From the IMG/VR virus record IMGVR_UViG_3300022200_000019, positions 1-64,000 of that record: a stretch of DNA of 64,000 nt; one strand, given 5' to 3'. Made by a program: the position numbers and the translations under genes. Within the stretch, counting starts at the first letter, position 1; each line of letters begins with the position of its first letter. This document shows, in pieces, positions 27,570 to 64,000 of the stretch. The notes below the pieces were generated by a model. The model made no database searches, had not been told where the DNA came from, and saw nothing but the letters and a program-made list of their open reading frames with translations.

Positions 27570-27641
27570 ATTAAATAATCTTTATATGTTGTAATTTAAC
27601 CACAATAAGTACATTTTATGAACTCACGGCAAATTTTTATG

Positions 27642-27649: not shown

Positions 27650-27662
27650 CGCTTTGACTAGG

Positions 27663-27691: not shown

Positions 27692-27720
27692 AAGCAGATA
27701 CTAACAAATAGGAGTTAGCA

Positions 27721-30882: not shown

Positions 30883-30907
30883 CAACTACTTAACACTCTA
30901 CTATAAT
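30879..30907 (+). promoter_or_regulatory. Host sigma70-type promoter, perfect consensus
   Basis: TTGACA (30879)-17 nt-TATAAT (30902); the GTG start at 30914 sits at the expected +1. Confidence 0.9.
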
Positions 30908-30913
30908 ACCAGT

Positions 30914-31675: not shown

Positions 31676-31677
31676 TT

Positions 31678-32199
31678 GTGGACTTAATGCTGGATATTGA
31701 AACTCTAGGTTCTGCACCTGACTCTGTGATTCTTACGATCGCGGCGTGTGCTTTTGATCCATTTTCCGGAACCATCTACGATAAGCATGCAATGTACCGT
31801 CGTATTGATACTGAATGTCAGGACGATAGAAGTATTGATGATCTAACTGTTGAATGGTGGGCAAAACAAAGTTTAGAAGCACAAGAAGAAGCGTTTGGAG
31901 AGCATGATCGTATTCCACTAGAAGATGCCCTTCAGGAACTCAGCAATTTGATCTGGAAATCAAATATTACCTGGGCCAATGGTATATCGTTTGATATTAC
32001 TATTTTGGAAAACGCATTCAAGAGTTATGGGATGCGATTGCCCTGGCAGTACTATAATGTTCTGGATGCCAGAACAGTCTATCGAATGAACCCAGATCAT
32101 GAACGTCTGGGAAACAGTCACCATGCATTCGAGGATGTTATTTTACAGATTAGTTTATTGCAACGTACTTTTAAAAAACTGGGTATCAAAAATCTCTGA
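31678..32199 (+). CDS. DEDDh 3'-5' exonuclease (DnaQ-like)
   Basis: LMLDIETL, WANGISFDITIL, VLDARTV, SHHAFEDVILQ; start refined to GTG 31678. Confidence 0.88.
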   Translation: MDLMLDIETLGSAPDSVILTIAACAFDPFSGTIYDKHAMYRRIDTECQDDRSIDDLTVEWWAKQSLEAQEEAFGEHDRIPLEDALQELSNLIWKSNITWANGISFDITILENAFKSYGMRLPWQYYNVLDARTVYRMNPDHERLGNSHHAFEDVILQISLLQRTFKKLGIKNL

Positions 32200-49662: not shown

Positions 49663-49688
49663 GCTCAAGCGATATACGCTAAAACACA

Positions 49689-49711
49689 ACGGGCCCAATG
49701 GGCCCGTTTTT
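49689..49711 (+). terminator. Intrinsic terminator
   Basis: ACGGGCCC-AAT-GGGCCCGT followed by TTTT. Confidence 0.88.
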
Positions 49712-49725: not shown

Positions 49726-50595
49726 ATGCATGCAGTAGCACTTATAAACTATCCAGGACATTTCTTATCAACACTGGGAACCATTAAAAATTTCCTGGAA
49801 ATAACCAAATGGCGACCGCCTTGGTATATTTTTGTAGATGATCTAGGACCACAGTGGGAAGCCTGGCCAGATTATCTAAACGATCTAAAATCAGCAATTG
49901 ATTTAAACTTTCCCAATCTAAATCCAACCTATATTTTATTCTCAGAATTTGAATTCCCCTATGTGTGGGATGGATGGTTAAGGCAGCAAATGGTAAAACT
50001 TAATCTGGATAGATTCTTACCAGGAGATCTTTGGTATGTAACAGACGGAGATGTTGTCTGTGAAAGGTTAATCAGCGCCAACGAAATACCATATAACTAT
50101 CAAACAACACATAATCCTCTTATTAACGCACAACAGTATACATATATTAAGCATATGCTAGGCATAGATGAAAAATTAAAATTACACAACGAAGATGTAT
50201 ATACACACCACATTCCAGTGCGTTGGGTTAGCCGAGATGATTTGCACGGACTTTACAGACATGTATCAGATACGGTGGGCAATGACGCAAATATTGCGCA
50301 TTTTAATCTAATGCGCGAAGAATGTATCATAGGTTATGGTCCAACATCCGAACATATGAGCATGACAGAATGGGACTTGCTAGAAACCTGGCGAATATTA
50401 ATAGATGGCCAAACATCCAATTTTCGATATTGGGTTATCGACGATGGCGCAGTGCCCAGACAAAACGTACCGGTTACACGCTTAAAGACATTTTTTGGCA
50501 CAGATCGGGACTTTTCTCAAGAATATTTTGAAAAACAAGGATTACAGGTGCCTACAGACGCATGGGAAAAGGTTTGTGAAATTTCTCGCACATAA
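49726..50595 (+). CDS. GT-A-like protein (DUF6492-like)
   Basis: GWLRQQMVKL signature followed by a DxD-like motif (WYVTDGD). Confidence 0.6.
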   Translation: MHAVALINYPGHFLSTLGTIKNFLEITKWRPPWYIFVDDLGPQWEAWPDYLNDLKSAIDLNFPNLNPTYILFSEFEFPYVWDGWLRQQMVKLNLDRFLPGDLWYVTDGDVVCERLISANEIPYNYQTTHNPLINAQQYTYIKHMLGIDEKLKLHNEDVYTHHIPVRWVSRDDLHGLYRHVSDTVGNDANIAHFNLMREECIIGYGPTSEHMSMTEWDLLETWRILIDGQTSNFRYWVIDDGAVPRQNVPVTRLKTFFGTDRDFSQEYFEKQGLQVPTDAWEKVCEISRT

Positions 50596-50687: not shown

Positions 50688-50733
50688 AGGCATACACTTA
50701 GGCATAAGGTAAAAAACATAGGCATAAGGCATA
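50688..50733 (+). repeat. Four AGGCATA copies in the gp32 5' leader
   Basis: Copies at 50688, 50700, 50720 and 50727; the last abuts the AGGAG RBS. Confidence 0.85.
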
Positions 50734-50746
50734 AGGAGATAATACT

Positions 50747-51794: not shown

Positions 51795-52730
51795 ATGATC
51801 ATTATCAACAATTACGGCAAGTTAATTGTAAAATCTAACAAATATCTCATAGGAGATCATCTTGGTGGTTTTGATCAAAATTTGCATTCGACTGTATTAG
51901 ATCAGGTTATTAGTTTAGCAATTGATAATAATATCGGCTCAATTTATACTGCGTATGTATTTCCTGATAATTTTAAAATAAAAAATATTAAATTCAAATA
52001 TTTAGAACGGTTAATTGGTGGTAACGGTTGGGAAGATCTCCGGAACTATAATATACATCCTGAAATTGAGTATAAGAATTTTATTTGTAGCTTTAATGGA
52101 TCAGATCATGTTAGCAGACAATTATTATCTTCTATACTAAACAACCAAGGTCATTTCAATCCAAAATACTCTAGTAAAAATTTTGCATATGATAACGATT
52201 GGGTAACATCTCATTTGGAAAACTTAAACTTAACAGATATTGAAATTCAATTATATTCTAGGTTTTTTGTTAATAACGATGAATTTAACAGCTCGGTATA
52301 TTCTTTTGGACACGTGCAATACGATCATAAAAACAATATCTATAATCTAGAAGATAAGTTAACAGGTAGTTTTTTACATATTGTAAGCGAATCAATGGCT
52401 ACAAGTTATTATCCGTTTGTAACTGAAAAATTTTTATATAGTATTGTGACACGAGGATTGTTTTTAGCATATGCGCACCCAGGCTGGCATGCACATATTG
52501 AAAAATATTATGGATTTAAATTATACAACACTATTTTTGATTACTCGTTTGATACAATAAAAAATCCAGTTAAACGTTTGATTAGATTAATAGAGACAGT
52601 ATCAAAATTTTCAACACTATCTGTAGATGATTGGAAAGATTTATATCATATGGAACAGGATAATATTGAATATAATTACGATCATTATTTTAGCGGTAGA
52701 TACAAAGAACATCTTGCACAATTTGAATAG
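51795..52730 (+). CDS. AT-rich cargo gene, GT-B-like (GT10 fucosyltransferase-like C-terminal motif)
   Basis: FLHIVSES...PFVTEKFLYSIV...FLAY...YGFKLY..IFDYSFD. Confidence 0.5.
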   Translation: MIIINNYGKLIVKSNKYLIGDHLGGFDQNLHSTVLDQVISLAIDNNIGSIYTAYVFPDNFKIKNIKFKYLERLIGGNGWEDLRNYNIHPEIEYKNFICSFNGSDHVSRQLLSSILNNQGHFNPKYSSKNFAYDNDWVTSHLENLNLTDIEIQLYSRFFVNNDEFNSSVYSFGHVQYDHKNNIYNLEDKLTGSFLHIVSESMATSYYPFVTEKFLYSIVTRGLFLAYAHPGWHAHIEKYYGFKLYNTIFDYSFDTIKNPVKRLIRLIETVSKFSTLSVDDWKDLYHMEQDNIEYNYDHYFSGRYKEHLAQFE

Positions 52731-52764
52731 ATCGTTTATAATATAATTTTTAAAAGGATAAATT

Positions 52765-53895
52765 ATGGCAAAACCATTTGACGTGAGCAAATTCCGCAAA
52801 GACATTACAAAAAGTATCGATGGACTTAGCATTGGTTTTAATGACCCAACTGATTGGGTATCTACAGGCAACTATGCCTTAAACTACCTTATCTCCGGTG
52901 ACTTCCACAGGGGTGTGCCAATGGGTAAGGTTACTGTGTTTGCAGGTGAATCGGGCGCAGGTAAATCATACTTTGTGTCTGGTAATATTGCTAAACATGC
53001 CCAACAACAGGGTATTTTTGTAGTAATGATTGACACAGAGAATGCACTCGACGAGCAATGGCTACACGCATTAGGTGTTGATACTAGTGAAGATAAACTA
53101 CTGAAACTTAGCATGAGCATGATCGATGATGTTGCTAAGACTATTTCGATGTTTATGAAGGATTATAAATCAATGCCTGAAGAAGAACGTCCTAAGGTAT
53201 TGTTTATTATTGACTCGCTAGGTATGTTGTTAACGCCAACTGATGTTGACCAGTTTGAAAAAGGTGATATGAAGGGTGATTTAGGCCGTAAGCCTAAGGC
53301 ACTTACTGCACTTGTGCGCAACACCGTAAACATGATTGGTGCTTACAACGTAGGTTTGGTAGCAACCAATCACACATACGCATCGCAAGATATGTTTGAT
53401 CCAGATGATAAAATTTCAGGTGGTCAAGGATTTATCTACGCATCGTCAATTGTAGTAGCAATGCGTAAACTAAAGCTCAAAGAAGACGAAGATGGTAATA
53501 AGACTTCTGACGTACATGGCATTCGCGCTGCATGTAAGGTTATGAAGACTCGCTACGCAAAACCATTTGAAGCAGTACAAGTTAAGATCCCGTATGAGAC
53601 TGGTATGAATCCATATTCTGGATTAGTCGATTTGGCTGAAAAGAAAGGTTTGTTAACCAAGTCTGGCAACCGTTTGCGTTTTGTAGAACGTAGTACGGGC
53701 GAAGAGGTACTTGCGTTTCGTAAAGCGTGGGAAAACAACGATGATGGAATTCTTGATAGACTCATGCAAGATTTTTCTTTTGTGGAAGAGCAGATAAGTA
53801 GCCAAGAAGCAAACATTACAGACAATGTCGCAGATCATGTTGTTGAAGAAGATGTTGCTGATTCACTAGGAGTACAAAAAGATTATGAGTCCTGA
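52765..53895 (+). CDS. uvsX: RecA-like recombinase
   Basis: STGNYALNYLISG, Walker A GESGAGKS, IDTENALD, IIDSLGML, ATNHTYASQDMF, SGGQGFIYASSIV. Confidence 0.96.
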   Translation: MAKPFDVSKFRKDITKSIDGLSIGFNDPTDWVSTGNYALNYLISGDFHRGVPMGKVTVFAGESGAGKSYFVSGNIAKHAQQQGIFVVMIDTENALDEQWLHALGVDTSEDKLLKLSMSMIDDVAKTISMFMKDYKSMPEEERPKVLFIIDSLGMLLTPTDVDQFEKGDMKGDLGRKPKALTALVRNTVNMIGAYNVGLVATNHTYASQDMFDPDDKISGGQGFIYASSIVVAMRKLKLKEDEDGNKTSDVHGIRAACKVMKTRYAKPFEAVQVKIPYETGMNPYSGLVDLAEKKGLLTKSGNRLRFVERSTGEEVLAFRKAWENNDDGILDRLMQDFSFVEEQISSQEANITDNVADHVVEEDVADSLGVQKDYES

Positions 53896-54127
53896 TATGG
53901 CTATGGAAATTTGGGAAGCATTACGCTCGCATATTAGCGGCGGCTTCCAACAAGCAGCTGATGATTTTGCAGCCGTGTTAATTGAAAACGGTATGAATGC
54001 CAGCGATATTGCTGCTGTTGCACAAGATAGTTATGTTATCAAAAGTCTTGCCGAATATGCTGATGAAGAATTGGTGTATGAAGAAGATGATAATGATGAT
54101 TATGAATTTTACGAAGACGACGGATAA
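53885..54127 (+). CDS. Small protein with a highly acidic C-terminus
   Basis: 80 aa, overlaps the uvsX stop; ends EELVYEEDDNDDYEFYEDDG. Confidence 0.6.
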   Translation: MSPDMAMEIWEALRSHISGGFQQAADDFAAVLIENGMNASDIAAVAQDSYVIKSLAEYADEELVYEEDDNDDYEFYEDDG

Positions 54128-54133
54128 TTATTA

Positions 54134-55381
54134 ATGGAAGAAAATCACTTCTTTCCAATAGCATCTAATACGGCATGTCAATTAAAATGGGTTTGGAATA
54201 CACTATATTTAAACTCGGGTAAAAGTTTTTCTTGTCATCGCACTGGTGGTACTATTCTTACAGAAGATAATTTTGATAATTTTCATAATACTTCAGTATT
54301 ACTTTCAGATAGAAAAAATATGCTCAACGGGAAGTGGCCTACACAAAGTTGTTCATATTGCCGACAGATCGAAGAACAAGGCGGTGTAAGTGATCGTATA
54401 CGCCAATGGTCGATACCGTATAAGGTTCCTCAAGAACTGGAAAAAAATCCAACTGCAATATCAGTTACTCCAACTGTACTAGAGGTATATTTTAGCAATG
54501 TTTGTAATATGGGGTGCCTGTACTGTACCTCGCAATTAAGTTCAGTTATTGAGGCCGAAAATACAAAATTTGGTGATTTTTTAAAAGGAACGGTTAAATT
54601 AGTTAATCATTCAAATCAATATCAAAAGTTACTACCGTTGTTTTGGAAATGGTTAGACAAGCACGGTCAAAACTTGTATAGATTAAACATTTTAGGAGGA
54701 GAGCCTTTTTTCCAACAAGAATTTAATACTTTACTTGAATATTTAACAGCTAACCCAATGCCAGAATGCGAACTCAACGTAGTAACAAATCTTAAAATTT
54801 CAAAGGTACAATTAGAAAAAATTGTACAGATATTTAGAACATTGCTTAAAAATAGGCATATAAGACGTGTTGATATCACATGCAGTATTGATTGCTGGGG
54901 CCCAGAACAAGAATATGTTAGATACGGAATGAATTTACAACAGTGGGAAGAAAATTTTAATTATTTGTTAACAAAAAAATGGCTAACATTAAATATCAAC
55001 CAAACAATATCACCATTAACAATTAAAACTATGCCTGAACTTTTAAGAAAACTGCGTAAGTGGAGACAAGAAAGAAAAATAGGTCATTGGTTTTCTGGAG
55101 TATCTCCGCAACCTGATTATTTAAAAGTTAATGTCCTCGGTGGCGATGTATTTGATCAAGACTTTAACGAAATTTTATACTTGATGCCAGATAATAACAA
55201 CGAAGATCGGTTAGCTAAAAAGTATATGGAAGGTATCTATAAAGAAACACATTCAACCGGTATAGTTCCTGATTTAGTTAATGATCTGTTCATTTTTCTT
55301 AATGAAAAAGATAGACGCAGAAATACAAATTGGCGAGATATCTTTCCTTGGTTAATTGACTTTGAAAATAAAATAAAATAA
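54134..55381 (+). CDS. Radical SAM protein, same family as 42552
   Basis: CNMGCLYC, GGEPFF, SID.WG...EYVRYG; N-terminal ACQLKW...SCH...CSYC. Confidence 0.92.
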   Translation: MEENHFFPIASNTACQLKWVWNTLYLNSGKSFSCHRTGGTILTEDNFDNFHNTSVLLSDRKNMLNGKWPTQSCSYCRQIEEQGGVSDRIRQWSIPYKVPQELEKNPTAISVTPTVLEVYFSNVCNMGCLYCTSQLSSVIEAENTKFGDFLKGTVKLVNHSNQYQKLLPLFWKWLDKHGQNLYRLNILGGEPFFQQEFNTLLEYLTANPMPECELNVVTNLKISKVQLEKIVQIFRTLLKNRHIRRVDITCSIDCWGPEQEYVRYGMNLQQWEENFNYLLTKKWLTLNINQTISPLTIKTMPELLRKLRKWRQERKIGHWFSGVSPQPDYLKVNVLGGDVFDQDFNEILYLMPDNNNEDRLAKKYMEGIYKETHSTGIVPDLVNDLFIFLNEKDRRRNTNWRDIFPWLIDFENKIK

Positions 55382-55390
55382 AATATATAC

Positions 55391-55843
55391 ATGTGGTATA
55401 ACAAAGTAACACAAGATCTTTCTCAACTTCCTCAATTTATTGATTATTATAACGATGAATTGCAGGAAGCTAAACGAGAAGTTCGTATCGGCGGTAATGT
55501 AGAACAAAACATTAAGTTATTGCCCGGTGTTACAGAACATCGGTTTAATCAGCTTCAGGAAATTGAAGCAGTATTAAATTATCTCAATATTGAGCTACGC
55601 AAAATCAGACGCCGGCATTTTCAGAAGTATTTAGAAGGTTATGCACGAGCATTAACAAGTCGCGATGCTGAAAAGTATGTTGACGGCGAAGCTGAAGTAA
55701 TTGACATGGAAATGTTAATCAATGAGGTAGCATTATTGCGTAATCGTTGGTTAGGTATCATGAAAGGTCTCGAAACCAAGCAGTGGCAGATGGGACATAT
55801 TGTTAAACTTCGAACAGCTGGAATGGAGGACGTAAGTGTTTAA
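55391..55843 (+). CDS. uvsY: Recombination mediator
   Basis: Y.EGY.RALTSRDAEKYVDGE.EV...NEVALLRN.WLGIMKGL..KQWQ.GHIVKLRTAG. Confidence 0.85.
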   Translation: MWYNKVTQDLSQLPQFIDYYNDELQEAKREVRIGGNVEQNIKLLPGVTEHRFNQLQEIEAVLNYLNIELRKIRRRHFQKYLEGYARALTSRDAEKYVDGEAEVIDMEMLINEVALLRNRWLGIMKGLETKQWQMGHIVKLRTAGMEDVSV

Positions 55844-56591
55844 AAACGATCAAGAAGCACACGAGCATGCACTTGAAACATTAAATCTATTGTGGCAATA
55901 CAGTAGTTTTATGGAAAGCGTTGATACTTTAGCTGACATGGGTTGTGGCAACGGGTTTGATTTAGAATGGTGGGCTAATGCTTATATCTTAGATGATGAT
56001 GATAACGAAATTCCGTTAAACATTAAATGCACTGGTGTCGACTTAAAACCAGATTTGCCAATGGCAAAACAATATAAAAATGTTGTATATGAACGCAGAG
56101 ATTTTGAAACGTACTCGCTAAACAAAGAACAAAAAGGATTTGATGTTATTTGGTGCAATAACGCATTTCAATATGCAATCAATCCATTAGAAACACTTAG
56201 AACATGGTATGATTTAATGACCGACGGTGCTATGTTGTGTATAACAGTACCATCTACAACAGAAATTGAGTTTAATAGGCATAGAATTTCACAACATGAC
56301 TATTCATATTATCATTACACTCCTGTCAGTTTAATGCATATGCTGGCAGTCTCTGGGTTCGATTGTGCATTTATGAAAAAGGACGTTACTGAACCCTGGA
56401 TTAGAGCTGTGGTATACAAATCAGATATTAATCCAATGGATCCAAAAACTACCCGTTGGTATGATTTAGCAGAAACTGGGCTGCTTCCAGAAAGTGCTGT
56501 TAAGTGTATTAATTCTTATGGATATCTTAGACAACAAGATCTTGTACTTGAATGGTTAGACCGTAGTCTTCGCTGGCTTGGTGAAGATTAA
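55836..56591 (+). CDS. Class I SAM-dependent methyltransferase
   Basis: LADMGCGNG motif I; TGVDL; FDVIWC.NAFQY...P. Confidence 0.9.
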   Translation: MFKNDQEAHEHALETLNLLWQYSSFMESVDTLADMGCGNGFDLEWWANAYILDDDDNEIPLNIKCTGVDLKPDLPMAKQYKNVVYERRDFETYSLNKEQKGFDVIWCNNAFQYAINPLETLRTWYDLMTDGAMLCITVPSTTEIEFNRHRISQHDYSYYHYTPVSLMHMLAVSGFDCAFMKKDVTEPWIRAVVYKSDINPMDPKTTRWYDLAETGLLPESAVKCINSYGYLRQQDLVLEWLDRSLRWLGED

Positions 56592-56609
56592 ATCGTAAAC
56601 TACGCATAT

Positions 56610-56617
56610 AATAAATA
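56610..56617 (+). promoter_or_regulatory. Late box AATAAATA, 5 nt before the pseudogene ATG
   Basis: AATAAATA-CTACA-ATG(56623). Confidence 0.6.
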
Positions 56618-56622
56618 CTACA

Positions 56623-56775
56623 ATGAAAATTGTAGTAGTCACCGGGGCGTTAGCCCTATCTACAGAGAACATACCCGCTAGCTACAAGCAGCAAAAGCGT
56701 TAGCGCATACTTAAATGTGAGCGTTAATACTGATGATTGTTTTGTTAGCGAAAGTAAGTGGATTGTACGGTAATC
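56623..56775 (+). pseudogene. Decayed cytidylyltransferase (HIGH-motif, RfaE-C/TagD-like)
   Basis: MKIVVVTG, frameshift, PIYREHTR*LQAAKAL, frameshift, AYLNVSVNTDDCFVS; mirrors the family pattern MKIVxxTGGFDPxHxGHxxYLxAAKxLGDxLxVGVNSDxW. Confidence 0.75.
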
Positions 56776-56803
56776 GCTGCAAAGAAAAAGATAAAGGAAG
56801 ATT

Positions 56804-57487
56804 ATGAAACCAATTCCTATTTTTATTGGGTACGACCCACGAGAAGCAATAGCATATCACACATGCGCTAATTCAATTATTAGACACGCAAGTAAACCAG
56901 TGTCAATTATTCCATTGGCATTGAACTTGTTTGATGATTATAAAGAAACGCACACGGACGGAAGCAATCACTTCATCTACAGTAGATTCCTTGTTCCGCA
57001 TTTAATGGATTATCAAGGATGGGCAATCTTTATGGACGGTGATATGATTGTGCGTGATGACATTGTTAAACTATGGGAATTACGTGAGATGGACAAAGAC
57101 GTAATGGTAGTTAAACATGATTACAAAACACGTATGGAAACAAAGTATCTTGGTGCTAAGAACGAAGACTATCCTCGCAAGAACTGGTCGAGCGTTATTC
57201 TTTGGAATTGTAATAGTCACCCTAATAGGATTTTAAAGCCAAAGTATATTCAAAATTCAACTGGCTCACACTTGCATCGTTTTAGCTGGATTAAAGACGA
57301 GCGGATAGGCGAACTGCCAGCAGAGTGGAATTGGCTTCCGGATGAATATGGAGAGAATCCAGATGCTAAATTGTTGCATTACACATTAGGTACACCAAGT
57401 TTTCACGAATTTGCCAATACACCAATGGGTAGTGAATGGCATCGTGAACGTATTTTAACCGAGTATTGCGAACAGCACGGTTTATGA
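56804..57487 (+). CDS. Glycosyltransferase (GT-A, GT8-like)
   Basis: IFIGYDPRE, FIYSRFLVP, AIFMDGD (DxD), YPRKNWSSV.LWNC, LP.EWNWL, LLHYTLGTP. Confidence 0.88.
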   Translation: MKPIPIFIGYDPREAIAYHTCANSIIRHASKPVSIIPLALNLFDDYKETHTDGSNHFIYSRFLVPHLMDYQGWAIFMDGDMIVRDDIVKLWELREMDKDVMVVKHDYKTRMETKYLGAKNEDYPRKNWSSVILWNCNSHPNRILKPKYIQNSTGSHLHRFSWIKDERIGELPAEWNWLPDEYGENPDAKLLHYTLGTPSFHEFANTPMGSEWHRERILTEYCEQHGL

Positions 57488-57981
57488 TCTTAAAAATTGA
57501 GTTTGGCTGCGGAGAAACTCCGCACAAAGAAGACTTTAAAACTTGCGATATACGAAATTTGCCAGGAATTGATTTTGTTTGCGCTGCATGGGATATTAAC
57601 AAGTATGTTCCTCCAAATTCAGTAAGTGAGATATATTCGAGACATTTCTTTGAACATTTAACGTTTACTCAAGGCCAAACAGTATTAGATGCCTGGTACG
57701 AAATCTTAATGTCAGGTGGCACAATCGAAATGAGCGTGCCTAACATGTTATATCACCTACATCAATGGATAGATTCTCGCAACGATCCTAAAAAGTTTGC
57801 TCATGCTCTTGCTGGGATATGGGGTTGGCAGCGCGGTGAATTCAACGACGTGTGGGATGTACACAAAAGTGGGTATGATGAACAATCTCTATACGAGTTA
57901 TTGAAAAATCATAAGTTTCAAAATATTGAAATCTGGACTTCAAAAAAATCTAAACATTTACATTGTAAATGTTCAAAATAA
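57484..57981 (+). CDS. SAM-dependent methyltransferase (type 11-like)
   Basis: Start refined to ATG 57484; KIEFGCG, CDIR, SEIYSRHFFEHL, L..GG.IE.SVP. Confidence 0.85.
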   Translation: MILKIEFGCGETPHKEDFKTCDIRNLPGIDFVCAAWDINKYVPPNSVSEIYSRHFFEHLTFTQGQTVLDAWYEILMSGGTIEMSVPNMLYHLHQWIDSRNDPKKFAHALAGIWGWQRGEFNDVWDVHKSGYDEQSLYELLKNHKFQNIEIWTSKKSKHLHCKCSK

Positions 57982-57996
57982 TAAAAAGAAAATACA

Positions 57997-59112
57997 ATGT
58001 CTAATCTTAGATTTCAAGCAATTGATGGTGTTTTCAGGTCGCATGTTCCCTTGCCAGATATGGAGTGTGTTGAATTTGTAACCAATGAAAGATCATTGTC
58101 GGGACCAATACCTGATGTGTATTTGCAATACAACATCGGAGAGTCTAAATTTGCAAAACGCTTCCGTAATATTTACAGTAGAATATATCATAGCGGCAAG
58201 CCCTGGATAGTAGTTGAAGAGGCTGCATTTAGAAAAGGCACAAATTCAAAACTGCCGTATTACCGATGGAGTTGGTTTTCATACTATAATGATTCTGGTA
58301 TACATTATATGCCGGATAGCCCTGGCGATAGATGGGATCAAATCCAACAAGAAAACGGAATTGAGATTTTTCCCTGGGAGTCACGAGGAGATAATATACT
58401 GTTTATGATGCAGCGTCCTATGGATACTAGTCTGGCTCCAATGGAGCAGAAATACGGCACCTACGCCAAATTTGTCGAACACAGTTTACATAAAATACGA
58501 GCTAATACCGACAGACCTATACGTATTAGGATGCATCCGTTGCGATGGGTTCAACAGATGGCATTCTTGCAACCGATTTTAGATCAAATTAAAGATTGTA
58601 CCATTAGTGAGCATAGTATACGCATTGATGCCGACGGTGTAGCTAGTGGTGGTAATAGTTTGTATAAAGATTTTGATTCTGCTTGGGCTGTAGTAGGGGC
58701 TAATTCAAATAGTCTGACAGAAAGTGTATGTTATGGCATACCAACATGGACGTTAGATTCTAGTGCTATGGCCTGGCCAGTAGCGAATAAACATCTGCAT
58801 CTCATTGAATCTCCAAACTTTCCATGTCGGCAACAATGGTTAAACAATATGGGGTATACCCAATGGCGTGTAGATGAAATTAAACATGGCGATCCATTAG
58901 TGCATTTGATGCAATGGTATCCAAAAGTTGTTGAATTGCGCAAACAAAGAGTTGATTGGTTGATCATACAAGAAAAATTAAGATTTTACCATGACGCCTT
59001 AAATATGTTTTTGAACGATAATCATCCTTGGCCTATTAAGAAGGATTTTAAGGCACATATCGATACTGTTACTCGACGAATGTTAAAAAAATCTAATAAG
59101 AATAAACCATGA
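57997..59112 (+). CDS. KpsS/Capsule_synth-like GT-B protein (paralogue 1)
   Basis: TDRPIRIRMHP; AWAVVGANSNSLTESVCYGIP; QWL..MGYTQW..DEI. Confidence 0.6.
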   Translation: MSNLRFQAIDGVFRSHVPLPDMECVEFVTNERSLSGPIPDVYLQYNIGESKFAKRFRNIYSRIYHSGKPWIVVEEAAFRKGTNSKLPYYRWSWFSYYNDSGIHYMPDSPGDRWDQIQQENGIEIFPWESRGDNILFMMQRPMDTSLAPMEQKYGTYAKFVEHSLHKIRANTDRPIRIRMHPLRWVQQMAFLQPILDQIKDCTISEHSIRIDADGVASGGNSLYKDFDSAWAVVGANSNSLTESVCYGIPTWTLDSSAMAWPVANKHLHLIESPNFPCRQQWLNNMGYTQWRVDEIKHGDPLVHLMQWYPKVVELRKQRVDWLIIQEKLRFYHDALNMFLNDNHPWPIKKDFKAHIDTVTRRMLKKSNKNKP

Positions 59113-60524
59113 TATCAAACTTATCAAAAAATATAAAGCATCTTTGGCTAATTGAAATTGACGGCACCATATTAAAATATAATAGTTTATTACGCACCAA
59201 TGATAAGTTATTGCCAGGAGTCAAAGAGTTCTGGCAGAGCATTCCGTCAAACGATATTATTTTTTTACTCAGTACTAGACATGAGCAGTATCGAGATGAA
59301 ACATTGAATTTTTTATCTGAGCAAGGTCTGCGGTTTGATCATGCTATTTTTGGCCTTCCGCCGGGAGAGCGCATTTTAATCAGTAATATAAAGCCAAATG
59401 CTTTATTTAAAAATGCGTTAGCATTTGATGTTCTACGTAACGCAGGGTTCGATGACAACACGTTTGAATCTAATACTACGATAATAAGCCAAAAAGATCT
59501 TAAAAAATTAGCTAAAAAAGAAGCGCAAATTCAGAAAATGGAAGCATTGGCAGAACGTATTGAAAATGCTGAACAAAACATTGATATCGAAGACTTAAAT
59601 TATTCTAAAGAACATCGTAATTTGTTTAGTCATATTGTAGACTTTGTGAAAAATCCTAAAGACGTTGATGATTTAGAACTTATTATTAACAAATTAGAAA
59701 GTATGCATTCTGATATACAGTTAGTAGGATTAAGTGAACCAGAAGATGTAACAGCAAACGCAAGACGTAAAGGAATAACAGTGGACCCAATTGTAGAAAA
59801 TTTTGTACTAGGCGCCGCCGGGCGTATTGGCACATGGGATGGCGATGCTGACAACATTAATAATCCTATCGCATTGCGTAGTATTGCTAAACGCAAGCAA
59901 ATGAAGGCTTGTTTAGAAACCGGAAGAGATTTTTATTATATTGACACCGGTTATTTTGGTAATGGTAAAAGTAAAAAATATCATAGAGTTACACGTAATG
60001 CAATGCAGTGGTTAGGCGAAATTGAAGATCGCCCTAGCGATCGCTGGGAGGAAACTGGCGAAAAGTTAAAAAAACATACTCCAGGTAGTAAAATTTTACT
60101 CTGCCCGCCTAGCCAAAAAGCGTTAAAATACTGGGATATTGATCTCAGTGAATGGTTAGAAGAAACAATTAATAATATTAGAAACAACACTGATAGAGAA
60201 ATAATAATTAGAACTAAGCCAACCAGAACCGAGCGTATTACTACTAATACTATGGAACAGGCGCTTGCTGACGATGTACATTGTATGGTAACATTTAATA
60301 GCATCGCAGCCGTTGAGAGTTTAATGAATGGTAAACCAGTGTTTACAATGGGCCCTAATGCTGCGCATCATCTAAGTAACCAAGATTTATCTAATATCGA
60401 AAATCCTTTTATGCCTGATCAAGACCAAGTCTATAATCTGGTAAAATGCTTGGCATACCATCAATTTACTGTGCCTGAATTACGCAATGGGTTTGCTTGG
60501 GCAATGTTAAATGGAAAGGCATAA
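59109..60524 (+). CDS. Fusion: degenerate HAD-like domain + KpsS/Capsule_synth-like domain (paralogue 2)
   Basis: N-terminal LIEIDGTIL...LLPGVKEF...LSTR...RFDHAIFGLPPGERILI; C-terminal TDREIIIRTKP, CMVTFNSIAAVESLMNGKP, LAYHQFT..EL..G.AW. Confidence 0.6.
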   Translation: MISNLSKNIKHLWLIEIDGTILKYNSLLRTNDKLLPGVKEFWQSIPSNDIIFLLSTRHEQYRDETLNFLSEQGLRFDHAIFGLPPGERILISNIKPNALFKNALAFDVLRNAGFDDNTFESNTTIISQKDLKKLAKKEAQIQKMEALAERIENAEQNIDIEDLNYSKEHRNLFSHIVDFVKNPKDVDDLELIINKLESMHSDIQLVGLSEPEDVTANARRKGITVDPIVENFVLGAAGRIGTWDGDADNINNPIALRSIAKRKQMKACLETGRDFYYIDTGYFGNGKSKKYHRVTRNAMQWLGEIEDRPSDRWEETGEKLKKHTPGSKILLCPPSQKALKYWDIDLSEWLEETINNIRNNTDREIIIRTKPTRTERITTNTMEQALADDVHCMVTFNSIAAVESLMNGKPVFTMGPNAAHHLSNQDLSNIENPFMPDQDQVYNLVKCLAYHQFTVPELRNGFAWAMLNGKA

Positions 60525-61472
60525 ATGAACACAGTTGCAGTATATGTAAGCGGCGTTCCTGCTAAAACGAAACATACCGAAAAGCGAGAGCTATTGCATC
60601 GTTTTGGCCGAGGTGTTAAACGAGCTGGGGATAAATTAAAAATCGTTGACGGATTTCAGGTGTTAGATGCTGACATAGCGGTAATTCAGGGCTGGATCGG
60701 TATGAAAATTGGCGCACACTTAAAATTGCGTGAAACAGTAATTAATTATCAACGACAACGCGGTAAGCACACACTTGTTATTGATAGAAATTTATTTGGA
60801 TTTTTAAATCCAAATAACAGAGATCAATACTTGTGTTATAGTTTAGATGGCATTTTTCCAACAACTGGTTTTTATTTTAATACTCGTATTGACAAGCAAC
60901 GGTGGGAATCTATTAAACGTAATTACGGATTTACAGAACGTCCTTGGAAACAAGGAGATAATATTTTAATTACATTACAACGTAATCATGGGTGGAGTAT
61001 GGGACAGCAGCTTAGTGTTCAAGATTGGTTAAACAAAATTGTTCCCGAAATACGTCAATACACAGATCGACCAATTGTTATACGACCACATCCTGGCGAT
61101 GAGAAAACAATAAGAACACTTCGAATAACTGACAGGAATTGGAGATTTAGTAGCGAAGCGGATATCCGAGGAGATTTTGAGAATGCCTGGGCAACAGTAA
61201 CATATAACTCAAGCCCAGGAGCCGCTAGTTTAATTTGGGGTGTTCCAGCTTTTGTAACAGATCCTGAACCAGAAAGAAGTCAATCTTATCCATGGGCAAG
61301 TGCTGATTTGTCAACCATTGCGCAACCTTATATGCCAGACCGCAGACAATTTTATAATATAATTAGCCAGAGTCATTTTAATAACAACGAAATCGAATCA
61401 GGAGAAGCGTGGGCATTTATGAGGGAGAGATTAGCCGATGCTCCTAAAACACCAATCACTCCAATTCGTTAA
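60525..61472 (+). CDS. KpsS/Capsule_synth-like GT-B protein (paralogue 3)
   Basis: TDRPIVIRPHP; AWATVTYNSSPGAASLIWGVP; SQSHF...EI.SG.AW. Confidence 0.6.
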   Translation: MNTVAVYVSGVPAKTKHTEKRELLHRFGRGVKRAGDKLKIVDGFQVLDADIAVIQGWIGMKIGAHLKLRETVINYQRQRGKHTLVIDRNLFGFLNPNNRDQYLCYSLDGIFPTTGFYFNTRIDKQRWESIKRNYGFTERPWKQGDNILITLQRNHGWSMGQQLSVQDWLNKIVPEIRQYTDRPIVIRPHPGDEKTIRTLRITDRNWRFSSEADIRGDFENAWATVTYNSSPGAASLIWGVPAFVTDPEPERSQSYPWASADLSTIAQPYMPDRRQFYNIISQSHFNNNEIESGEAWAFMRERLADAPKTPITPIR

Positions 61473-61475
61473 CTA

Positions 61476-62042
61476 TTAAATATATTTGGTGTTAACAAAA
61501 CATAGCCCGCTATTAAGTACCCAGGCTTTTTTCTTTTTCTTTAAATTCATAGTAGTTGCCTGTTTAACCTGGGCTGTTAGATCACTGTTAAATTCTAACC
61601 CATAATCACTGAAAGTTTTAATCCAATATTCTGCTGGTTTTAGATTAACGTGATGATATCCGTTTGGGTCTTGGCTATACGTCATTGTAACATATTTTGC
61701 TTGTTGAAATGCTGGCATGTACATGGGAACATATTCTTCATGTACATGCTCTACAAATTCGCAACTCCATGCTAAATCAAATTCTTCGTTAATTGGTGCT
61801 GGGCCTGAGGTAAAATCATGTAAGATAAATGACTCCGCAGGCGAACGGTTGATAGTGAAATCACCATCGACTCCAATAGCGTATAAATCCATTTCTTGAG
61901 CCAAATTTACCATTCCGCCTGGACCACAGCCGATGTCCAACATTGATTTAATGTTAAACGTAGATTTAAAAAATTCTAATGTACCAACATCTAAATGTGT
62001 TTTATTTTGATGCCCACCTAAATGTTTAGGAAGTTCTTTCAT
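61476..62042 (-). CDS. Class I SAM-dependent methyltransferase
   Basis: MLDIGCGPG, GVDGD, FDLAWSCEFVEHV, GYHHVN. Confidence 0.9.
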   Translation of the reverse strand: MKELPKHLGGHQNKTHLDVGTLEFFKSTFNIKSMLDIGCGPGGMVNLAQEMDLYAIGVDGDFTINRSPAESFILHDFTSGPAPINEEFDLAWSCEFVEHVHEEYVPMYMPAFQQAKYVTMTYSQDPNGYHHVNLKPAEYWIKTFSDYGLEFNSDLTAQVKQATTMNLKKKKKAWVLNSGLCFVNTKYI

Positions 62043-62664
62043 TACAATACTTTATCCATTGGTCTTTAGTGATATCAAGATACCAAGCACGCAGTGGTTT
62101 TCCAACCTTCTCACCATTGGGTCGTTGATTTGAAAACCACGCAAATCCTTTCTCAAGTAACCATGATGTCGCCCACCGATCTCGTTTTGCAGTCCAGTTC
62201 ATTTTCATAAACACTCGATTAGTGTAATTAAAGATATCGTTTAAGAAATATTCCCAATCGCCTGCGTCTTTGTCAAATGCTCGGTCAAATTCGGTGCGAG
62301 TGGCAAAAATAATGTCATAGTGTTTTGGTAGATTCATCGGAGTTTGTGGATGAATCCATAATTCGTATCGATTAACACCTAATAAATCACAACATTCTTT
62401 AAATAATCCGTCTTGTACATCAGTACAATCGCATTCGATTCCTCGTTCACGCAAAATAGCAGCAAGGACGCCAATTCCTGCTCCTATATCTAGCGCAGTT
62501 TTAACATTATCAATTCCGCCGTTTCTACTGTTAGCATAGTCAACAACATGTTGTTTTTCTTCATAATACCAATCCCATTTACGTCCGTATTTTGCTCCTG
62601 ACTGATATTTGTCAACTTCAAAACATCTTTTGATAACCGCTTGTTTATAATCGTCAAGTGTCAT
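62026..62664 (-). CDS. Class I SAM-dependent methyltransferase
   Basis: ALDIGAGIG, CTDV, YDIIFA. Confidence 0.8.
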   Translation of the reverse strand: MTLDDYKQAVIKRCFEVDKYQSGAKYGRKWDWYYEEKQHVVDYANSRNGGIDNVKTALDIGAGIGVLAAILRERGIECDCTDVQDGLFKECCDLLGVNRYELWIHPQTPMNLPKHYDIIFATRTEFDRAFDKDAGDWEYFLNDIFNYTNRVFMKMNWTAKRDRWATSWLLEKGFAWFSNQRPNGEKVGKPLRAWYLDITKDQWIKYCNERTS

Positions 62665-62671
62665 GATGACT

Positions 62672-62679
62672 TATTTATT
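62672..62679 (-). promoter_or_regulatory. Late box AATAAATA, 7 nt before the 62664 ATG
   Basis: AATAAATA-AGTCATC-ATG on the minus strand, no SD. Confidence 0.45.
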
Positions 62680-63481
62680 GCCAATAAGGTTCTGCTCGGT
62701 TGACCTTGAGATCTTTTGCCTTGCTACGACCAAGTTCTTTGCGTTTACCTTTTAAATGATCCAGATACGCACCCCACTCGGTATTAATGAGTGGATGCCC
62801 TTCACCACCGTCTAAATGTGCTGACCAATCCTGGTTGTGCATTTCAGGCATACGTCCTCGAACAATATCAAAAACATAACTATCATGCCACTCTTTAAGT
62901 GTAAAGATACCGTTTTCTGCATCTTCGTACATATGTTCAAAGTTTTCTAAAAACTTACTAGCATTTGCATGTTCTAAATTTATTGCGTATAAACCGCATT
63001 CGGTATACTTTTTGCCACGACCTAAATAACTCATATCATATTGTTCAGGAATCAAGCGTTTGATCGTCTGCATTGAAATTGGACTGTGGCAATAGTTATC
63101 GCCGTCCATCCATACAAGAATTCCATCCTTCACTTCTTCAGCACACGCAAAAATGGCATATACCTTGTGAGCAAATCTAATGGCATCCCATTTAAATGCT
63201 TTTTTGCCATCTTTGCGGTCTGTTCTTGAAGGATCGGTATCATTATGCCCAGTAGCACGAGGATCATTCTTCCAGCGTTCTTTAAACGCCACAAGTTTTG
63301 GACTTGCTGTATTTAAATTTCTAACAATCAAATTGGGTGCGCTTTCTGCAACATCAAAGCCTTCTGCGTACACATAGAGTGCAATTTCAGATGGCCAATT
63401 TTGGAGAAATGATTGAACCATACGCTTTCCATATAAGTCATATCCGTTTTTGTTAAATGTAGTAACTACTGTATATTGCAT
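62675..63481 (-). CDS. Glycosyltransferase-like protein (GT-A, DxD)
   Basis: VVTTF...GY..YG.RMV.SF, KWDAIRFAHKVYAI, LVWMDGD, ECG.YAIN, EWHDSYVFD..R, DHLKG.RK. Confidence 0.75.
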   Translation of the reverse strand: MQYTVVTTFNKNGYDLYGKRMVQSFLQNWPSEIALYVYAEGFDVAESAPNLIVRNLNTASPKLVAFKERWKNDPRATGHNDTDPSRTDRKDGKKAFKWDAIRFAHKVYAIFACAEEVKDGILVWMDGDNYCHSPISMQTIKRLIPEQYDMSYLGRGKKYTECGLYAINLEHANASKFLENFEHMYEDAENGIFTLKEWHDSYVFDIVRGRMPEMHNQDWSAHLDGGEGHPLINTEWGAYLDHLKGKRKELGRSKAKDLKVNRAEPYWQ

Positions 63482-63487
63482 AATTAA

Positions 63488-63495
63488 TATTTATA
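63488..63495 (-). promoter_or_regulatory. Perfect TATAAATA late box, 6 nt before the 63481 ATG
   Basis: TATAAATA-TTAATT-ATG on the minus strand, no SD. Confidence 0.7.
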
Positions 63496-64000
63496 TGGCG
63501 CAAAAGAGCATAGCATACTTTCCAAAACAGGTCGCACTCAATGGTTCTGGTGTACTCAAAGATTTTTTAAAAGGTGCGATTAAACACGGAATAGTTCCTG
63601 TGGAAAATAGCATGGATGCTGATTATGCTGTGATATGGTCTGTGCTCTGGAACGGCAAGATGACTGCAAACCAGCGTGTATATGAGCATTACAGGCATTT
63701 CAATAAACCGGTATTTGTAATTGATGTGGGCGCACTGCATCGTGAAGTTACTTGGAAAGTGGCACTCAATAACATCAATGCACACGGTTACTATGGTCAT
63801 GAACTGAATTTAGATCCAGATCGTCCGAAAACTCTGGGAATTAGTTTACGAACTCAAACCCGCAACAACGGCAAAATTTTAATTGCCGCGCAGCACCGCA
63901 GGAGCCAACAAGTCAAAGATGTTAACATTGAACAATGGACCAATCAGATGTACAATAAAATTACATCAATTACTGATCGACCAGTGGTAATACGCCCACA
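63495..64000 (+). CDS. KpsS/Capsule_synth-like protein (paralogue 4), runs off the window end; absent from the ORF track
   Basis: Open from ATG 63495 to the end: MAQKSIAYFP...DYAVIWSVLW.G.M..NQ.VY...IDVG.L.R...KILIAAQH...TDRPVVIRP. Confidence 0.7.
   Translation, partial: MAQKSIAYFPKQVALNGSGVLKDFLKGAIKHGIVPVENSMDADYAVIWSVLWNGKMTANQRVYEHYRHFNKPVFVIDVGALHREVTWKVALNNINAHGYYGHELNLDPDRPKTLGISLRTQTRNNGKILIAAQHRRSQQVKDVNIEQWTNQMYNKITSITDRPVVIRP

What the first reader, a model, noticed from the sequence alone, without database searches (positions are those of the whole stretch)
55836..64000. Late-expressed phage glycan-building locus: candidate virion or host-surface glycosylation system
Seen: ten intact genes plus one pseudogene in about 8 kb: two GT-A glycosyltransferases, four KpsS-like GT-B paralogues, four SAM methyltransferases and a cytidylyltransferase relic. 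T4-type late boxes precede three of them (56610, 62672, 63488). Known: KpsS/KpsC are CMP-Kdo-dependent transferases; HIGH-motif cytidylyltransferases activate sugars or polyols; T4 DNA glucosyltransferases act on replicating DNA. Inference: late timing and enzyme mix point to a methylated oligosaccharide put on virion proteins (the Ser/Thr-rich fibres) or on the host envelope, rather than DNA hypermodification.
Basis: partly seen in the sequence, partly recalled or inferred. Interest (0 to 1): 0.8.

Follow-up and report, generated by a model that had tools for sequence, protein, structure and literature searches.

The report
Late phage glycan-building gene island
An uncultured estuarine T4-like jumbo phage carries a variable island of soluble sugar-transferring and methylating enzymes, including four relatives of bacterial Kdo (acidic sugar) transferases, behind the same promoter-like motif as its structural genes; it most likely decorates the virus particle, but the target is untested.

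Summary
Window 55836-64000 holds two GT-A glycosyltransferases, four paralogues with the fold of retaining Kdo transferases (KpsC/WbbB/KrkA), two firm and two probable SAM methyltransferases, and a decayed nucleotidyltransferase start.

- **Extent:** the window is the first 64 kb of a 212,917-bp JGI contig. The island runs on to about 65.1 kb, completing the fourth paralogue and adding a third GT-A.
- **Catalytic motifs:** only the 371-aa paralogue keeps both motifs of retaining Kdo transferases, QXXXD and (K/R)XHP. Two others keep only RXHP, and the HAD-fused one keeps neither.
- **Timing:** exact TATAAATA is not enriched. Its core ATAAATA sits almost only in front of structural-module genes and at three island sites, so late expression is a reasonable inference.
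- **Context:** all island proteins are predicted soluble. No export genes and no base-hydroxymethylating or DNA-methylating genes were found among the genes annotated nearby. Gene content differs between close relatives. A related cassette in Caulobacter phage CcrSC lies between tail-fibre and lysis genes.

Best reading: late cytoplasmic assembly of a methylated, probably ulosonic-acid-containing oligosaccharide on virion proteins (about 0.45). Host-envelope remodelling and DNA hypermodification remain open. I rate it a new variant of a known kind.

The parts
55836..56591 (+). Class I SAM methyltransferase, 251 aa. It overlaps the end of the UvsY-like gene and is conserved in all relatives examined.
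   Evidence: Pfam Methyltransf_12, _31, _23 and _11 above cut-off. Orthologues are 48-61% identical in L001 and L003.
56611..56617 (+). Late-type promoter-like box (AATAAATA), five bases before the ATG of the relic.
   Evidence: L001 has the same box, five bases and an ATG in front of its intact nucleotidyltransferase gene.
56623..56770 (+). Decayed 5' remnant of a nucleotidyltransferase-cupin gene: a 26-codon ORF plus one frame-shifted piece. The rest of the gene is deleted.
   Evidence: Collinear weak matches to residues 3-9 and 25-44 of L001:7559-8329. That protein is RfaE-domain-II-like plus a cupin.
56804..57487 (+). GT-A glycosyltransferase of family GT8, 227 aa, with a DGD motif.
   Evidence: Pfam PF01501 at 31.9 bits against a cut-off of 24.3, and phrog_28018 at 2.5e-39. 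Homologues occur in Pelagibacter phage Mosig, Caulobacter phages and Synechococcus phage S-SCSM2R.
57484..57981 (+). Probable small SAM methyltransferase. JGI aa from the ATG at 57484; the ORF from the TTG at 57466 gives 171 aa.
   Evidence: Methyltransf_23 at E 0.0067 over the whole domain, and a PHROG methyltransferase at 3e-4. Gene call.
57997..59112 (+). Paralogue class A, 371 aa. It has the Kdo-transferase-like fold and carries both QRPMD (QXXXD) and RMHP ((K/R)XHP).
   Evidence: AF2 pLDDT 90; best PDB matches are KpsC, KrkA and WbbB. Q139, D143, R178 and H180 are invariant in 69 of 69 homologues.
59109..60524 (+). Paralogue class B, 471 aa. The N-terminal HAD-like domain reads EIDGT where L003 reads DVDGT. 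The C-terminal transferase-like domain lacks both QXXXD and HP.
60525..61472 (+). Paralogue class C, 315 aa. It has RPHP, but QRNHG stands in place of QXXXD.
   Evidence: More than 1,138 metagenome homologues, none with a Pfam domain. AF2 pLDDT 92; best PDB matches are KpsC, WbbB and KrkA at E 4e-8 to 1e-5. A profile aligns its RPHPG to the RAHPG of WbbB.
61476..62042 (-). SAM methyltransferase, 188 aa. Absent from relatives L001 and L003.
   Evidence: Methyltransf_11 at 22.0 bits against a cut-off of 21.2, and Methyltransf_23 at 1.6e-5. No counterpart found in L001 or L003.
62026..62664 (-). Probable SAM methyltransferase, 212 aa, with a DIGAGIG motif. Absent from L001 and L003.
   Evidence: Four methyltransferase Pfam families below threshold on the same stretch, and PrmA at E 0.0038.
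62672..62678 (-). Late-type promoter-like box (AATAAATA), seven bases before the ATG of the 212-aa gene.
62675..63481 (-). GT-A-like nucleotide-sugar transferase, 268 aa, with a DGD motif.
   Evidence: Atlas feature and structure neighbours are viral Nucleotid_trans, GT8 and DXD families. Orthologues are 72% identical in L003 and 38% in L001.
63488..63495 (-). Exact TATAAATA in the 13-bp gap between divergent genes, six bases before the ATG of the 268-aa gene.
   Evidence: The same box occurs in L003.
63495..64000 (+). Paralogue class D, cut by the window end. The full gene is 278 aa and runs to contig position 64331. It has QHRRS and, in orthologues, RPHP.

Best explanation
**Shown by tool results**
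- The region is a hypervariable glycan-assembly island of a T4-like jumbo phage.
- It encodes only soluble enzymes: three GT-A transferases with DXD motifs (one lies just past the window), four Kdo-transferase-like paralogues, and two firm plus two probable SAM methyltransferases within the window (a further weak candidate lies past its end).
- The enzyme folds, the catalytic motifs, the conserved position in related phages and the differences in gene content between relatives are all shown.

**Inferred mechanism**
- The genes are transcribed late, from ATAAATA-type boxes shared with the structural genes.
- In the cytoplasm the enzymes build a short oligosaccharide step by step on newly made virion proteins. 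Fibres and the long tail-tube extension are candidate acceptors.
- The GT-A enzymes add NDP-hexose-type sugars.
- The RXHP-bearing paralogues add CMP-activated ulosonic acids, most simply host CMP-Kdo. The 371-aa enzyme would use a covalent Asp143 intermediate.
- The methyltransferases O-methylate the sugars.

The timing, the donor sugars and the virion acceptor are all inferred, not shown.
For: - **Identity:** Pfam GT8. Fold matches to KpsC, WbbB and KrkA for two paralogues. QXXXD and RXHP are invariant in 69 of 69 class A homologues. These are the motifs that define retaining Kdo transferases (PMC12887879). Among 116 family representatives, 12 hit Capsule_synth and 1 hits a polysialyltransferase family.
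- **Late timing:** the ATAAATA core occurs 16 times, with 12 directly upstream of same-strand starts. Nine lie in intergenic sequence against 2.1 +/- 1.5 in shuffles. The ten copies outside the island that sit before gene starts all lie in structural-gene blocks, including the tail sheath, a 2,384-aa structural protein and a fibre. The box is conserved in L001 and L003.
- **Cytoplasmic, with no export:** no hydrophobic segment reaches 1.6 in any island protein, and no transporter, flippase or polyprenyl-phosphate transferase was found.
- **Surface-antigen-like variation:** close relatives swap in a sulfotransferase, a kinase-nucleotidyltransferase, oxygenase-like genes and extra methyltransferases on a conserved backbone.
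- **Related cassette in a late module:** in Caulobacter phage CcrSC the paralogue, the GT8-like gene and an FkbM methyltransferase lie between tail-fibre genes and the lysozyme gene.
- **Viral relatives:** structural relatives are multi-copy in Tetraselmis virus 1.
Against: - No expression or chemical data exist.
- The island sits between UvsY and a DEAD-box helicase, which is a DNA-metabolism neighbourhood.
- The three island boxes lie only 5-7 bases from the ATG. They would give near-leaderless mRNAs and may not be promoters. The plus-strand genes could instead be read through from the sigma-70-like promoter upstream of UvsX.
- Three of the four paralogues lack the Asp nucleophile, and one also lacks the His, so their donors and even their activity are uncertain.
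- TM-scores to the solved enzymes are only 0.4-0.5.
- Ser/Thr richness of the fibres is not specific.
- In Pelagibacter phage Mosig the related cassette follows ribonucleotide reductase and RuvC genes, not structural genes.
Confidence: 0.45

Rival explanations
1. Host-envelope remodelling. The soluble transferases act at the inner face of the host membrane on LPS core or capsule-linker intermediates. They would add Kdo-like and hexose residues and methyl groups, altering the surface of the infected cell, for example to block superinfection or to help release.
For: The closest characterised relatives all work on envelope glycans. KpsC and KpsS act on a lipid acceptor, WbbB on O-antigen, GT8 enzymes on the LPS core, and RfaE-like enzymes on heptose activation. 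Those enzymes are also peripheral proteins without membrane spans. Authors of cyanophage genomes interpret comparable gene sets this way (PMC12801897). A GT8 homologue lies three genes from kdsB and kdsA in S-SCSM2R.
Against: No priming transferase, flippase, polymerase, ligase or ABC exporter was found in the island or among the genes annotated in its flanks. Late expression in a lytic jumbo phage leaves little time for a changed surface to matter. The CcrSC cassette sits inside the tail and lysis module.
Confidence: 0.2
2. DNA hypermodification. The transferases build a sugar chain on hydroxymethylated pyrimidines of phage DNA to evade host nucleases.
For: The island lies among recombination and replication genes: gp32-like, UvsX, UvsY and a helicase. 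Pyle et al. (bioRxiv 10.1101/2023.12.21.572611) showed mono- to trisaccharides of hexose, HexNAc and heptose on 5hmC. They describe GT8-like secondary transferases related to WaaJ and WaaO, and discuss Kdo as a bulky donor. L001 carries a faint 2OG-Fe(II) oxygenase hit.
Against: No thymidylate-synthase-like hydroxymethylase, TET/JBP dioxygenase or DNA methyltransferase family was seen. This covers the nearest upstream genes (from 49726) and about 19 kb downstream, or within 10 kb in relatives. Pyle et al. report that such pathways usually cluster. The methyltransferases are of the small-molecule class I type. Seven transferases plus sugar methylation far exceeds any known DNA glycan. The late-type boxes fit poorly with modification of replicating DNA. 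The oxygenase hit is to the prolyl-hydroxylase-like PF13640, not to Tet_JBP.
Confidence: 0.15
3. Another acceptor, or a partly decaying island. The enzymes would make a soluble or lipid-linked glycoconjugate, or modify a non-structural protein. Some members would be non-catalytic remnants.
For: The nucleotidyltransferase is reduced to a relic. The HAD nucleophile is Glu instead of Asp in this phage but Asp in L003. Class B lacks both catalytic motifs.
Against: All other genes are intact. The same proteins recur on 10-15 contigs, and class B and class C are conserved across distant phages. The backbone order is conserved, which argues for selection.
Confidence: 0.1

Closest known systems
Retaining beta-Kdo transferases KpsC/KpsS (GT107), WbbB (GT99) and KrkA (GT140)
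   Same: They are the best PDB fold matches for both modelled paralogues. Class A carries QXXXD and (K/R)XHP with Asp-to-His spacing of 37 residues, against 33-34 in WbbB and KrkA. A profile aligns the phage RPHPG to the RAHPG of WbbB.
   Different: Sequence identity is 9-15% and TM-scores are only 0.4-0.5. No window protein reaches the Pfam PF05159 threshold. Classes C and D replace the nucleophilic Asp with Gly or Ser, and class B also lacks the His. There are no kps export genes and no sign of a lipid acceptor. The genes are phage-encoded and multi-copy.
Virion glycosylation in mycobacteriophages (Freeman et al. 2023, known to me and as summarised in PMC12619734)
   Same: Phage-encoded cytoplasmic glycosyltransferases decorate capsid and tail-tube subunits. 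The proposed late timing matches.
   Different: The transferase families and the host envelope type differ. Those genes lie next to the structural genes. Nothing here has been shown chemically.
Autonomous glycosylation machinery of giant viruses (chloroviruses, Megavirinae, Tetraselmis virus 1)
   Same: Multiple virus-encoded soluble transferases work with sugar methyltransferases, and gene sets are clade-specific. Tetraselmis virus 1 has at least four structural relatives of the paralogues, two of them annotated as capsule polysaccharide biosynthesis proteins. Its host's theca contains Kdo and 5-O-methyl-Kdo (Becker et al. 1989, cited in PMC3355719).
   Different: These are eukaryotic viruses. 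The link to methylated Kdo is an analogy only.
Phage DNA sugar-hypermodification gene clusters (Pyle et al., bioRxiv 10.1101/2023.12.21.572611)
   Same: They use GT8-like secondary transferases and LPS-type donors, and lie near DNA-metabolism genes.
   Different: No C5-methyltransferase, 5mYOX or thymidylate-synthase-like partner was found nearby. This island has many more transferases, small-molecule-type methyltransferases and late-type boxes.
Glycan cassettes of Pelagibacter phage Mosig, Caulobacter Bertelyvirus phages and Synechococcus phage S-SCSM2R
   Same: Homologous GT8 genes are 26-47% identical. In Mosig and CcrSC a class B-like paralogue lies next to the GT8 gene. Methyltransferases and a sulfotransferase accompany them.
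   Different: Those cassettes are smaller, hold one paralogue rather than four, and are unstudied and mostly annotated as hypothetical.

Membership tests
Retaining Kdo transferases (GT99/GT107/GT140) | Two-Rossmann GT-B-like fold resembling KpsC, WbbB and KrkA | tested here: met
   Foldseek top hits for the class C and class A models have probability 1.0 and E 4e-8 to 1e-4. TM-scores are only 0.4-0.5.
Retaining Kdo transferases (GT99/GT107/GT140) | QXXXD motif with the nucleophilic Asp | tested here: inconclusive
   Met only in class A: QRPMD, with Q139 and D143 invariant in 69 of 69 homologues. Not met in class B (CPPSQK), class C (QRNHG) or class D (QHRRS).
Retaining Kdo transferases (GT99/GT107/GT140) | (K/R)XHP motif that binds CMP | tested here: inconclusive
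   Met in class A (RMHP), class C (RPHP) and class D (RPHP in full-length orthologues). Not met in class B (RTKP).
Retaining Kdo transferases (GT99/GT107/GT140) | Use of CMP-beta-Kdo with retention of configuration through a covalent Asp adduct | not testable with these tools
   This needs an enzyme assay or intact-mass measurement of an Asp-to-Cys variant, as described in PMC12887879.
Pfam PF05159 Capsule_synth (KpsS/KpsC) | Score above the gathering threshold of 20 bits | tested here: not met
   Of the window's paralogues only the 471-aa protein hits it, at E 0.14 (12 bits); two homologues in L001 and L003 score alike. Of 116 family representatives, 12 match at E up to 0.01 (best 1.4e-6). 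One, P0260, scores 24 bits, above the threshold.
GT8 (Pfam PF01501) | Score above the gathering threshold, and a DXD motif | tested here: met
   31.9 bits against 24.3 for 56804-57487. DGD is present in the translation.
Class I SAM methyltransferases | Pfam match above threshold, with a glycine-rich motif I | tested here: inconclusive
   Met for the 251-aa protein and narrowly for the 188-aa protein. The 165/171-aa and 212-aa proteins score only below threshold.
T4-type late promoter | TATAAATA about 6-7 bases upstream of the transcript start, read by a gp55-type factor | tested here: inconclusive
   The exact octamer is not enriched (3 against 6.7 expected). The ATAAATA core is strongly tied to the starts of structural genes. 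Neither a gp55 homologue nor transcript ends were examined.
HAD phosphatase | DxDxT motif I with a nucleophilic Asp | tested here: not met
   The window protein reads EIDGT, while the L003 orthologue reads DVDGT. The HAD-like fold is supported by the Atlas and by weak Pfam hits.
Phage 5hmC/5hmU sugar-hypermodification cluster | A neighbouring thymidylate-synthase-like hydroxymethylase, or a C5-methyltransferase with a 5mYOX dioxygenase | tested here: not met
   No such Pfam family was found among the nearest upstream genes (from 49726) or about 19 kb downstream, or within 10 kb in L001 and L003-L005. The rest of the genome was not examined.

The most novel reading that the evidence does not exclude
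The phage coats its own tail or fibre proteins with an O-methylated oligosaccharide that contains Kdo or another ulosonic acid. The glycan is built entirely in the cytoplasm by phage enzymes from host CMP-sugars. The paralogues that lack the Asp nucleophile would then be new mechanistic classes of CMP-ulosonic-acid transferase. This would be the first acidic-sugar virion glycosylation system in a phage of Gram-negative bacteria. It would also give a function to a family of at least 4,395 unannotated 50%-identity protein clusters, apparently mostly viral.
Probability: 0.3. Interest if true: 0.8.

Novelty: new variant of a known kind. Interest (0 to 1): 0.55.

Why it matters
Virus-encoded glycosylation is established for giant viruses and for a few mycobacteriophages. 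For phages of Gram-negative bacteria it is essentially unexplored.

- **A large unannotated family:** the Kdo/sialyl-transferase-like proteins here belong to a family with 4,395 representatives at E up to 0.001 in a library clustered at 50% identity. The window's own members reach no curated Pfam threshold, and only about a quarter of the 116 family representatives scanned matched any Pfam family.
- **A surface-antigen-like pattern:** if the island decorates virions, it would explain why its gene content changes between otherwise near-identical phages. That would make it a candidate surface-variation system that could affect host range and environmental persistence.
- **A mechanistic question:** the paralogues that keep the CMP-binding motif but lack the nucleophile are natural test cases for how this enzyme fold changes mechanism.

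Tried and rejected
- **Nucleotide similarity:** megablast of the island and of 20 kb of structural genes against 50,697 phage records found nothing.
- **Direct family scans of the paralogues:** Pfam, PHROGs and NCBIfam gave nothing at normal thresholds. Sequence searches of PDB gave only an E 0.37 hit to WbbB for class C and nothing for class A.
- **S-SCSM2R ORFs 262 and 263:** I tested whether these two ORFs, which lie between the GT8 homologue and kdsB, are paralogues of the family. They are not (hhalign probability below 1%).
- **The three GT-A-like proteins and the DUF6492-like protein at 49726-50595:** they show no pairwise BLASTP similarity to each other.
- **The 'moraphage' paper (PMC12619734):** it concerns a different lineage.
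- **Walking along the contig:** this was meant to look for base-modification genes. It gave only proteins without Pfam hits and was stopped after about 19 kb.
- **Tools and papers not available:** The Freeman et al. 2023 paper is not held.
- **Ser/Thr richness of fibres:** considered as acceptor evidence and rejected as non-specific.

Full report
**Source and setting**

The window is positions 1-64000 of JGI metagenome contig Ga0196901_1000001, which is 212,917 bp long (sample 3300022200). The reverse complement of locus L009 matches window 52675-64000 exactly. The phage is an uncultured T4-like jumbo myovirus.

- Its UvsX (52765-53895) is 64-68% identical to those of Agrobacterium phage Atu_ph07, Vibrio phage 2.275.O, Pectobacterium phage CBB and Cronobacter phage GAP32.
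- No phage record shares nucleotide similarity with it.
- Upstream of the finding lie tail fibres, a 2,384-aa structural protein, tail sheath, tail tube and terminase.
- These are followed by a gp32-like protein, UvsX, a twitch-domain radical SAM protein and a UvsY-like protein.
- Downstream, past the window end, a DEAD-box helicase follows.

**Checking the observation**

- *GT-A enzymes.* The 227-aa protein passes the Pfam GT8 threshold. The 268-aa minus-strand protein has no Pfam hit, but the Atlas places it among viral nucleotide-diphospho-sugar transferases by both features and predicted structure. Both carry a DGD motif.
- *Methyltransferases.* Two are firm or borderline-firm (251 aa and 188 aa). 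Two are only probable (165/171 aa and 212 aa).
- *Paralogues.* Four proteins are paralogous, with BLASTP E-values of 1e-18, 8e-18 and 2e-6. The fourth is cut by the window end but is an intact 278-aa gene in the contig.
- *Extent.* A third GT-A-like gene of 261 aa follows at contig 64301-65086. A weak methyltransferase candidate lies at 66861-67556. The island therefore extends beyond the finding.
- *Relic.* The 212-bp gap at 56592-56803 holds a 26-codon ORF and a frame-shifted piece. Both align collinearly with the N-terminus of the 256-aa gene that fills this slot in relative L001. That protein is closest to RfaE domain II (heptose-1-phosphate adenylyltransferase) and next to glycerol-3-phosphate cytidylyltransferase, and it is fused to a cupin. 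'Nucleotidyltransferase relic' is therefore the better name. The match statistics are weak. The shared position and the shared box, five bases and ATG make it credible.

**What the paralogues are**

None of the window's four paralogues reaches a curated family threshold.

- AF2 models of the 315-aa and 371-aa proteins (pLDDT 92 and 90) have as best PDB matches only retaining Kdo transferases: KpsC (GT107), WbbB (GT99) and KrkA (GT140). UDP-GlcNAc 2-epimerases and a polysialyltransferase follow. TM-scores are modest, at 0.4-0.5.
- A recent paper defines the conserved elements of these enzymes as a QXXXD motif (nucleophilic Asp, carboxylate-binding Gln) and a (K/R)XHP CMP-binding motif shared with sialyltransferases (PMC12887879).
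- The paralogues fall into four classes:

| Class | Protein | QXXXD position | (K/R)XHP position |
|---|---|---|---|
| A | 371 aa | QRPMD | RMHP |
| B | 471 aa | CPPSQK (absent) | RTKP (absent) |
| C | 315 aa | QRNHG (Asp lost) | RPHP |
| D | 278 aa | QHRRS (Asp lost) | RPHP |

- In class A, all four key residues are invariant in 69 of 69 homologues.
- A profile of class A finds 4,395 representatives at E up to 0.001 in a library clustered at 50% identity.
- Of 116 of these representatives, 74 carry both motifs and about 20 carry the class C pattern. Twelve hit Pfam Capsule_synth, 14 hit DUF6716 and one hits a polysialyltransferase family.
- The L003 class A homologue weakly matches NCBIfam's 'surface carbohydrate biosynthesis protein' and 'BFO_1060 family glycosyltransferase'.
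Only one of the four proteins meets the catalytic definition.
- Class B has an N-terminal HAD-like domain. Its nucleophile position is Glu in this phage but Asp in L003.

**Comparative anatomy**

Related contigs keep a common backbone. After UvsY come the 251-aa methyltransferase, GT8, class B, class C, the minus-strand GT-A, class D and the third GT-A (L001 from a 336,973-bp contig, and L003-L005).

- Variable genes are inserted between backbone genes. L003 adds a sulfotransferase, a class A paralogue, and a 501-aa nucleotidyltransferase-kinase. L001 adds two unknown genes, an oxygenase-like gene, a methyltransferase and the intact nucleotidyltransferase-cupin.
- This window is unique among those examined in having the two minus-strand methyltransferases.
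- Outside this lineage, a GT8 gene next to a class B-like paralogue recurs with methyltransferases in two cultured phages. In Pelagibacter phage Mosig it follows ribonucleotide reductase and RuvC genes. In Caulobacter phage CcrSC and its kin it lies between tail-fibre genes and the lysozyme gene.
- A GT8 homologue in Synechococcus phage S-SCSM2R lies three genes from kdsB and kdsA.

**Timing**

- Exact TATAAATA occurs three times against 6.7 expected.
- The core ATAAATA occurs 16 times, and 12 copies lie directly upstream of a same-strand start.
- Nine copies lie in the 2.7% of the window that is intergenic, against 2.1 +/- 1.5 in composition-matched shuffles.
- Outside the island, the copies before gene starts all lie in structural-gene blocks, 20-73 bases from the ATG.
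- The gp32-like, UvsX and UvsY genes lack the motif. UvsX and two other genes have sigma-70-like promoters instead.
- The three island boxes lie only 5-7 bases from an ATG and have no Shine-Dalgarno sequence, which implies near-leaderless transcripts if they are real promoters. L001 shows the same arrangement at its nucleotidyltransferase gene, and L003 at the minus-strand GT-A gene.
- Late expression is thus a supported inference, not a shown fact.

**Target**

- All island proteins are predicted soluble.
- No export or priming genes were found in the island or among the genes annotated in its flanks.
- No thymidylate-synthase-like, TET/JBP or DNA-methyltransferase family was found among the nearest upstream genes (from 49726) or within about 19 kb downstream.
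- These points, the shared late motif, the surface-antigen-like variation and the CcrSC arrangement favour virion proteins as the acceptor. I put this at about 0.45.
- Host-envelope remodelling (about 0.2) is suggested by what all the closest characterised enzymes do.
- DNA hypermodification (about 0.15) is kept alive by the DNA-metabolism neighbourhood and by the demonstration that phage GT8-like and LPS-derived transferases glycosylate 5hmC (bioRxiv 10.1101/2023.12.21.572611).
- Another acceptor, or partial decay of the island, takes about 0.1.

**Novelty and verdict**

Phage and giant-virus glycan gene sets are known, so this is not a new category. No paper describing this island or its Kdo-transferase-like family turned up in the seven literature searches. 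Several features make it a new variant worth experimental follow-up:
- the fourfold paralogy with graded loss of catalytic motifs;
- the late-type boxes;
- the hypervariable gene content in a jumbo phage.

Structural relatives are multi-copy in Tetraselmis virus 1. Its host's wall contains Kdo and 5-O-methyl-Kdo (reference cited in PMC3355719). This is an analogy that makes a methylated ulosonic-acid glycan chemically plausible.

Noticed in passing
window 54134-55381 (+): A 415-aa radical SAM protein of NCBIfam family N_Twi_rSAM (227 bits against a cut-off of 170) sits between UvsX and UvsY. A weak viperin-family hit lies on the same domain. The gene is present in L003-L005 (93% identical in L003) but absent from L001. 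Function unknown.
   Followed up: partly
window-wide; for example 13433, 20716, 21640, 32596, 35965, 39301, 45945: ATAAATA, usually preceded by C, G or A rather than T, marks the starts of structural-gene blocks 20-42 bases before the ATG. It looks like this phage's late promoter core. The island copies lie only 5-7 bases from the ATG, which suggests leaderless late mRNAs.
   Followed up: partly
window 59109-59510 (N-terminus of the 471-aa protein): HAD motif I reads EIDGT in this phage and DVDGT in the L003 orthologue. The nucleophilic Asp is therefore replaced in the same genome that has lost the nucleotidyltransferase. This may reflect loss of one sugar-activation branch.
   Followed up: partly
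window 50700-50736 (+): Three exact copies of AGGCATAAGG lie within 37 bases just upstream of the gp32-like gene. They are the only copies in the window. They may form a regulatory operator.
   Followed up: no
window 36627-38021 (+): The tail tube homologue is 464 aa, far longer than typical T4-type tubes. It has a Ser/Thr/Pro-rich C-terminal extension from about residue 350, which makes it a candidate glycan acceptor by analogy with mycobacteriophage tail tubes.
   Followed up: no
window 10495-13371, 13481-20635, 21670-23874 (+): Three large fibre or structural proteins share the same C-terminal module (phrog_22593 and phrog_19602). One of them is 2,384 aa long.
   Followed up: no
window 49726-50595 (+): A 289-aa protein scores just below the threshold of DUF6492 (21.8 bits against 22.9). 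It follows a 1,229-aa virion structural protein and a strong hairpin at 49688-49708. It might be a further sugar-transferase-like gene outside the island.
   Followed up: partly
window 27640-27720 and 30850-30913 (+): Near-consensus sigma-70 promoters (TTGACA, 17 bases, TATAAT) lie upstream of 27721 and 30914. This contrasts with the ATAAATA boxes of the structural genes.
   Followed up: no
window 53885-54127 (+): An 80-aa protein with 22 acidic and 2 basic residues lies between UvsX and the radical SAM gene. It is conserved in relatives, at 36% identity in L001.
   Followed up: no
window 24524-24970 (-) and 31666-32199 (+): A NUDIX hydrolase and an Rv2179c-like 3'-5' exoribonuclease are encoded among the tail genes.
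   Followed up: no
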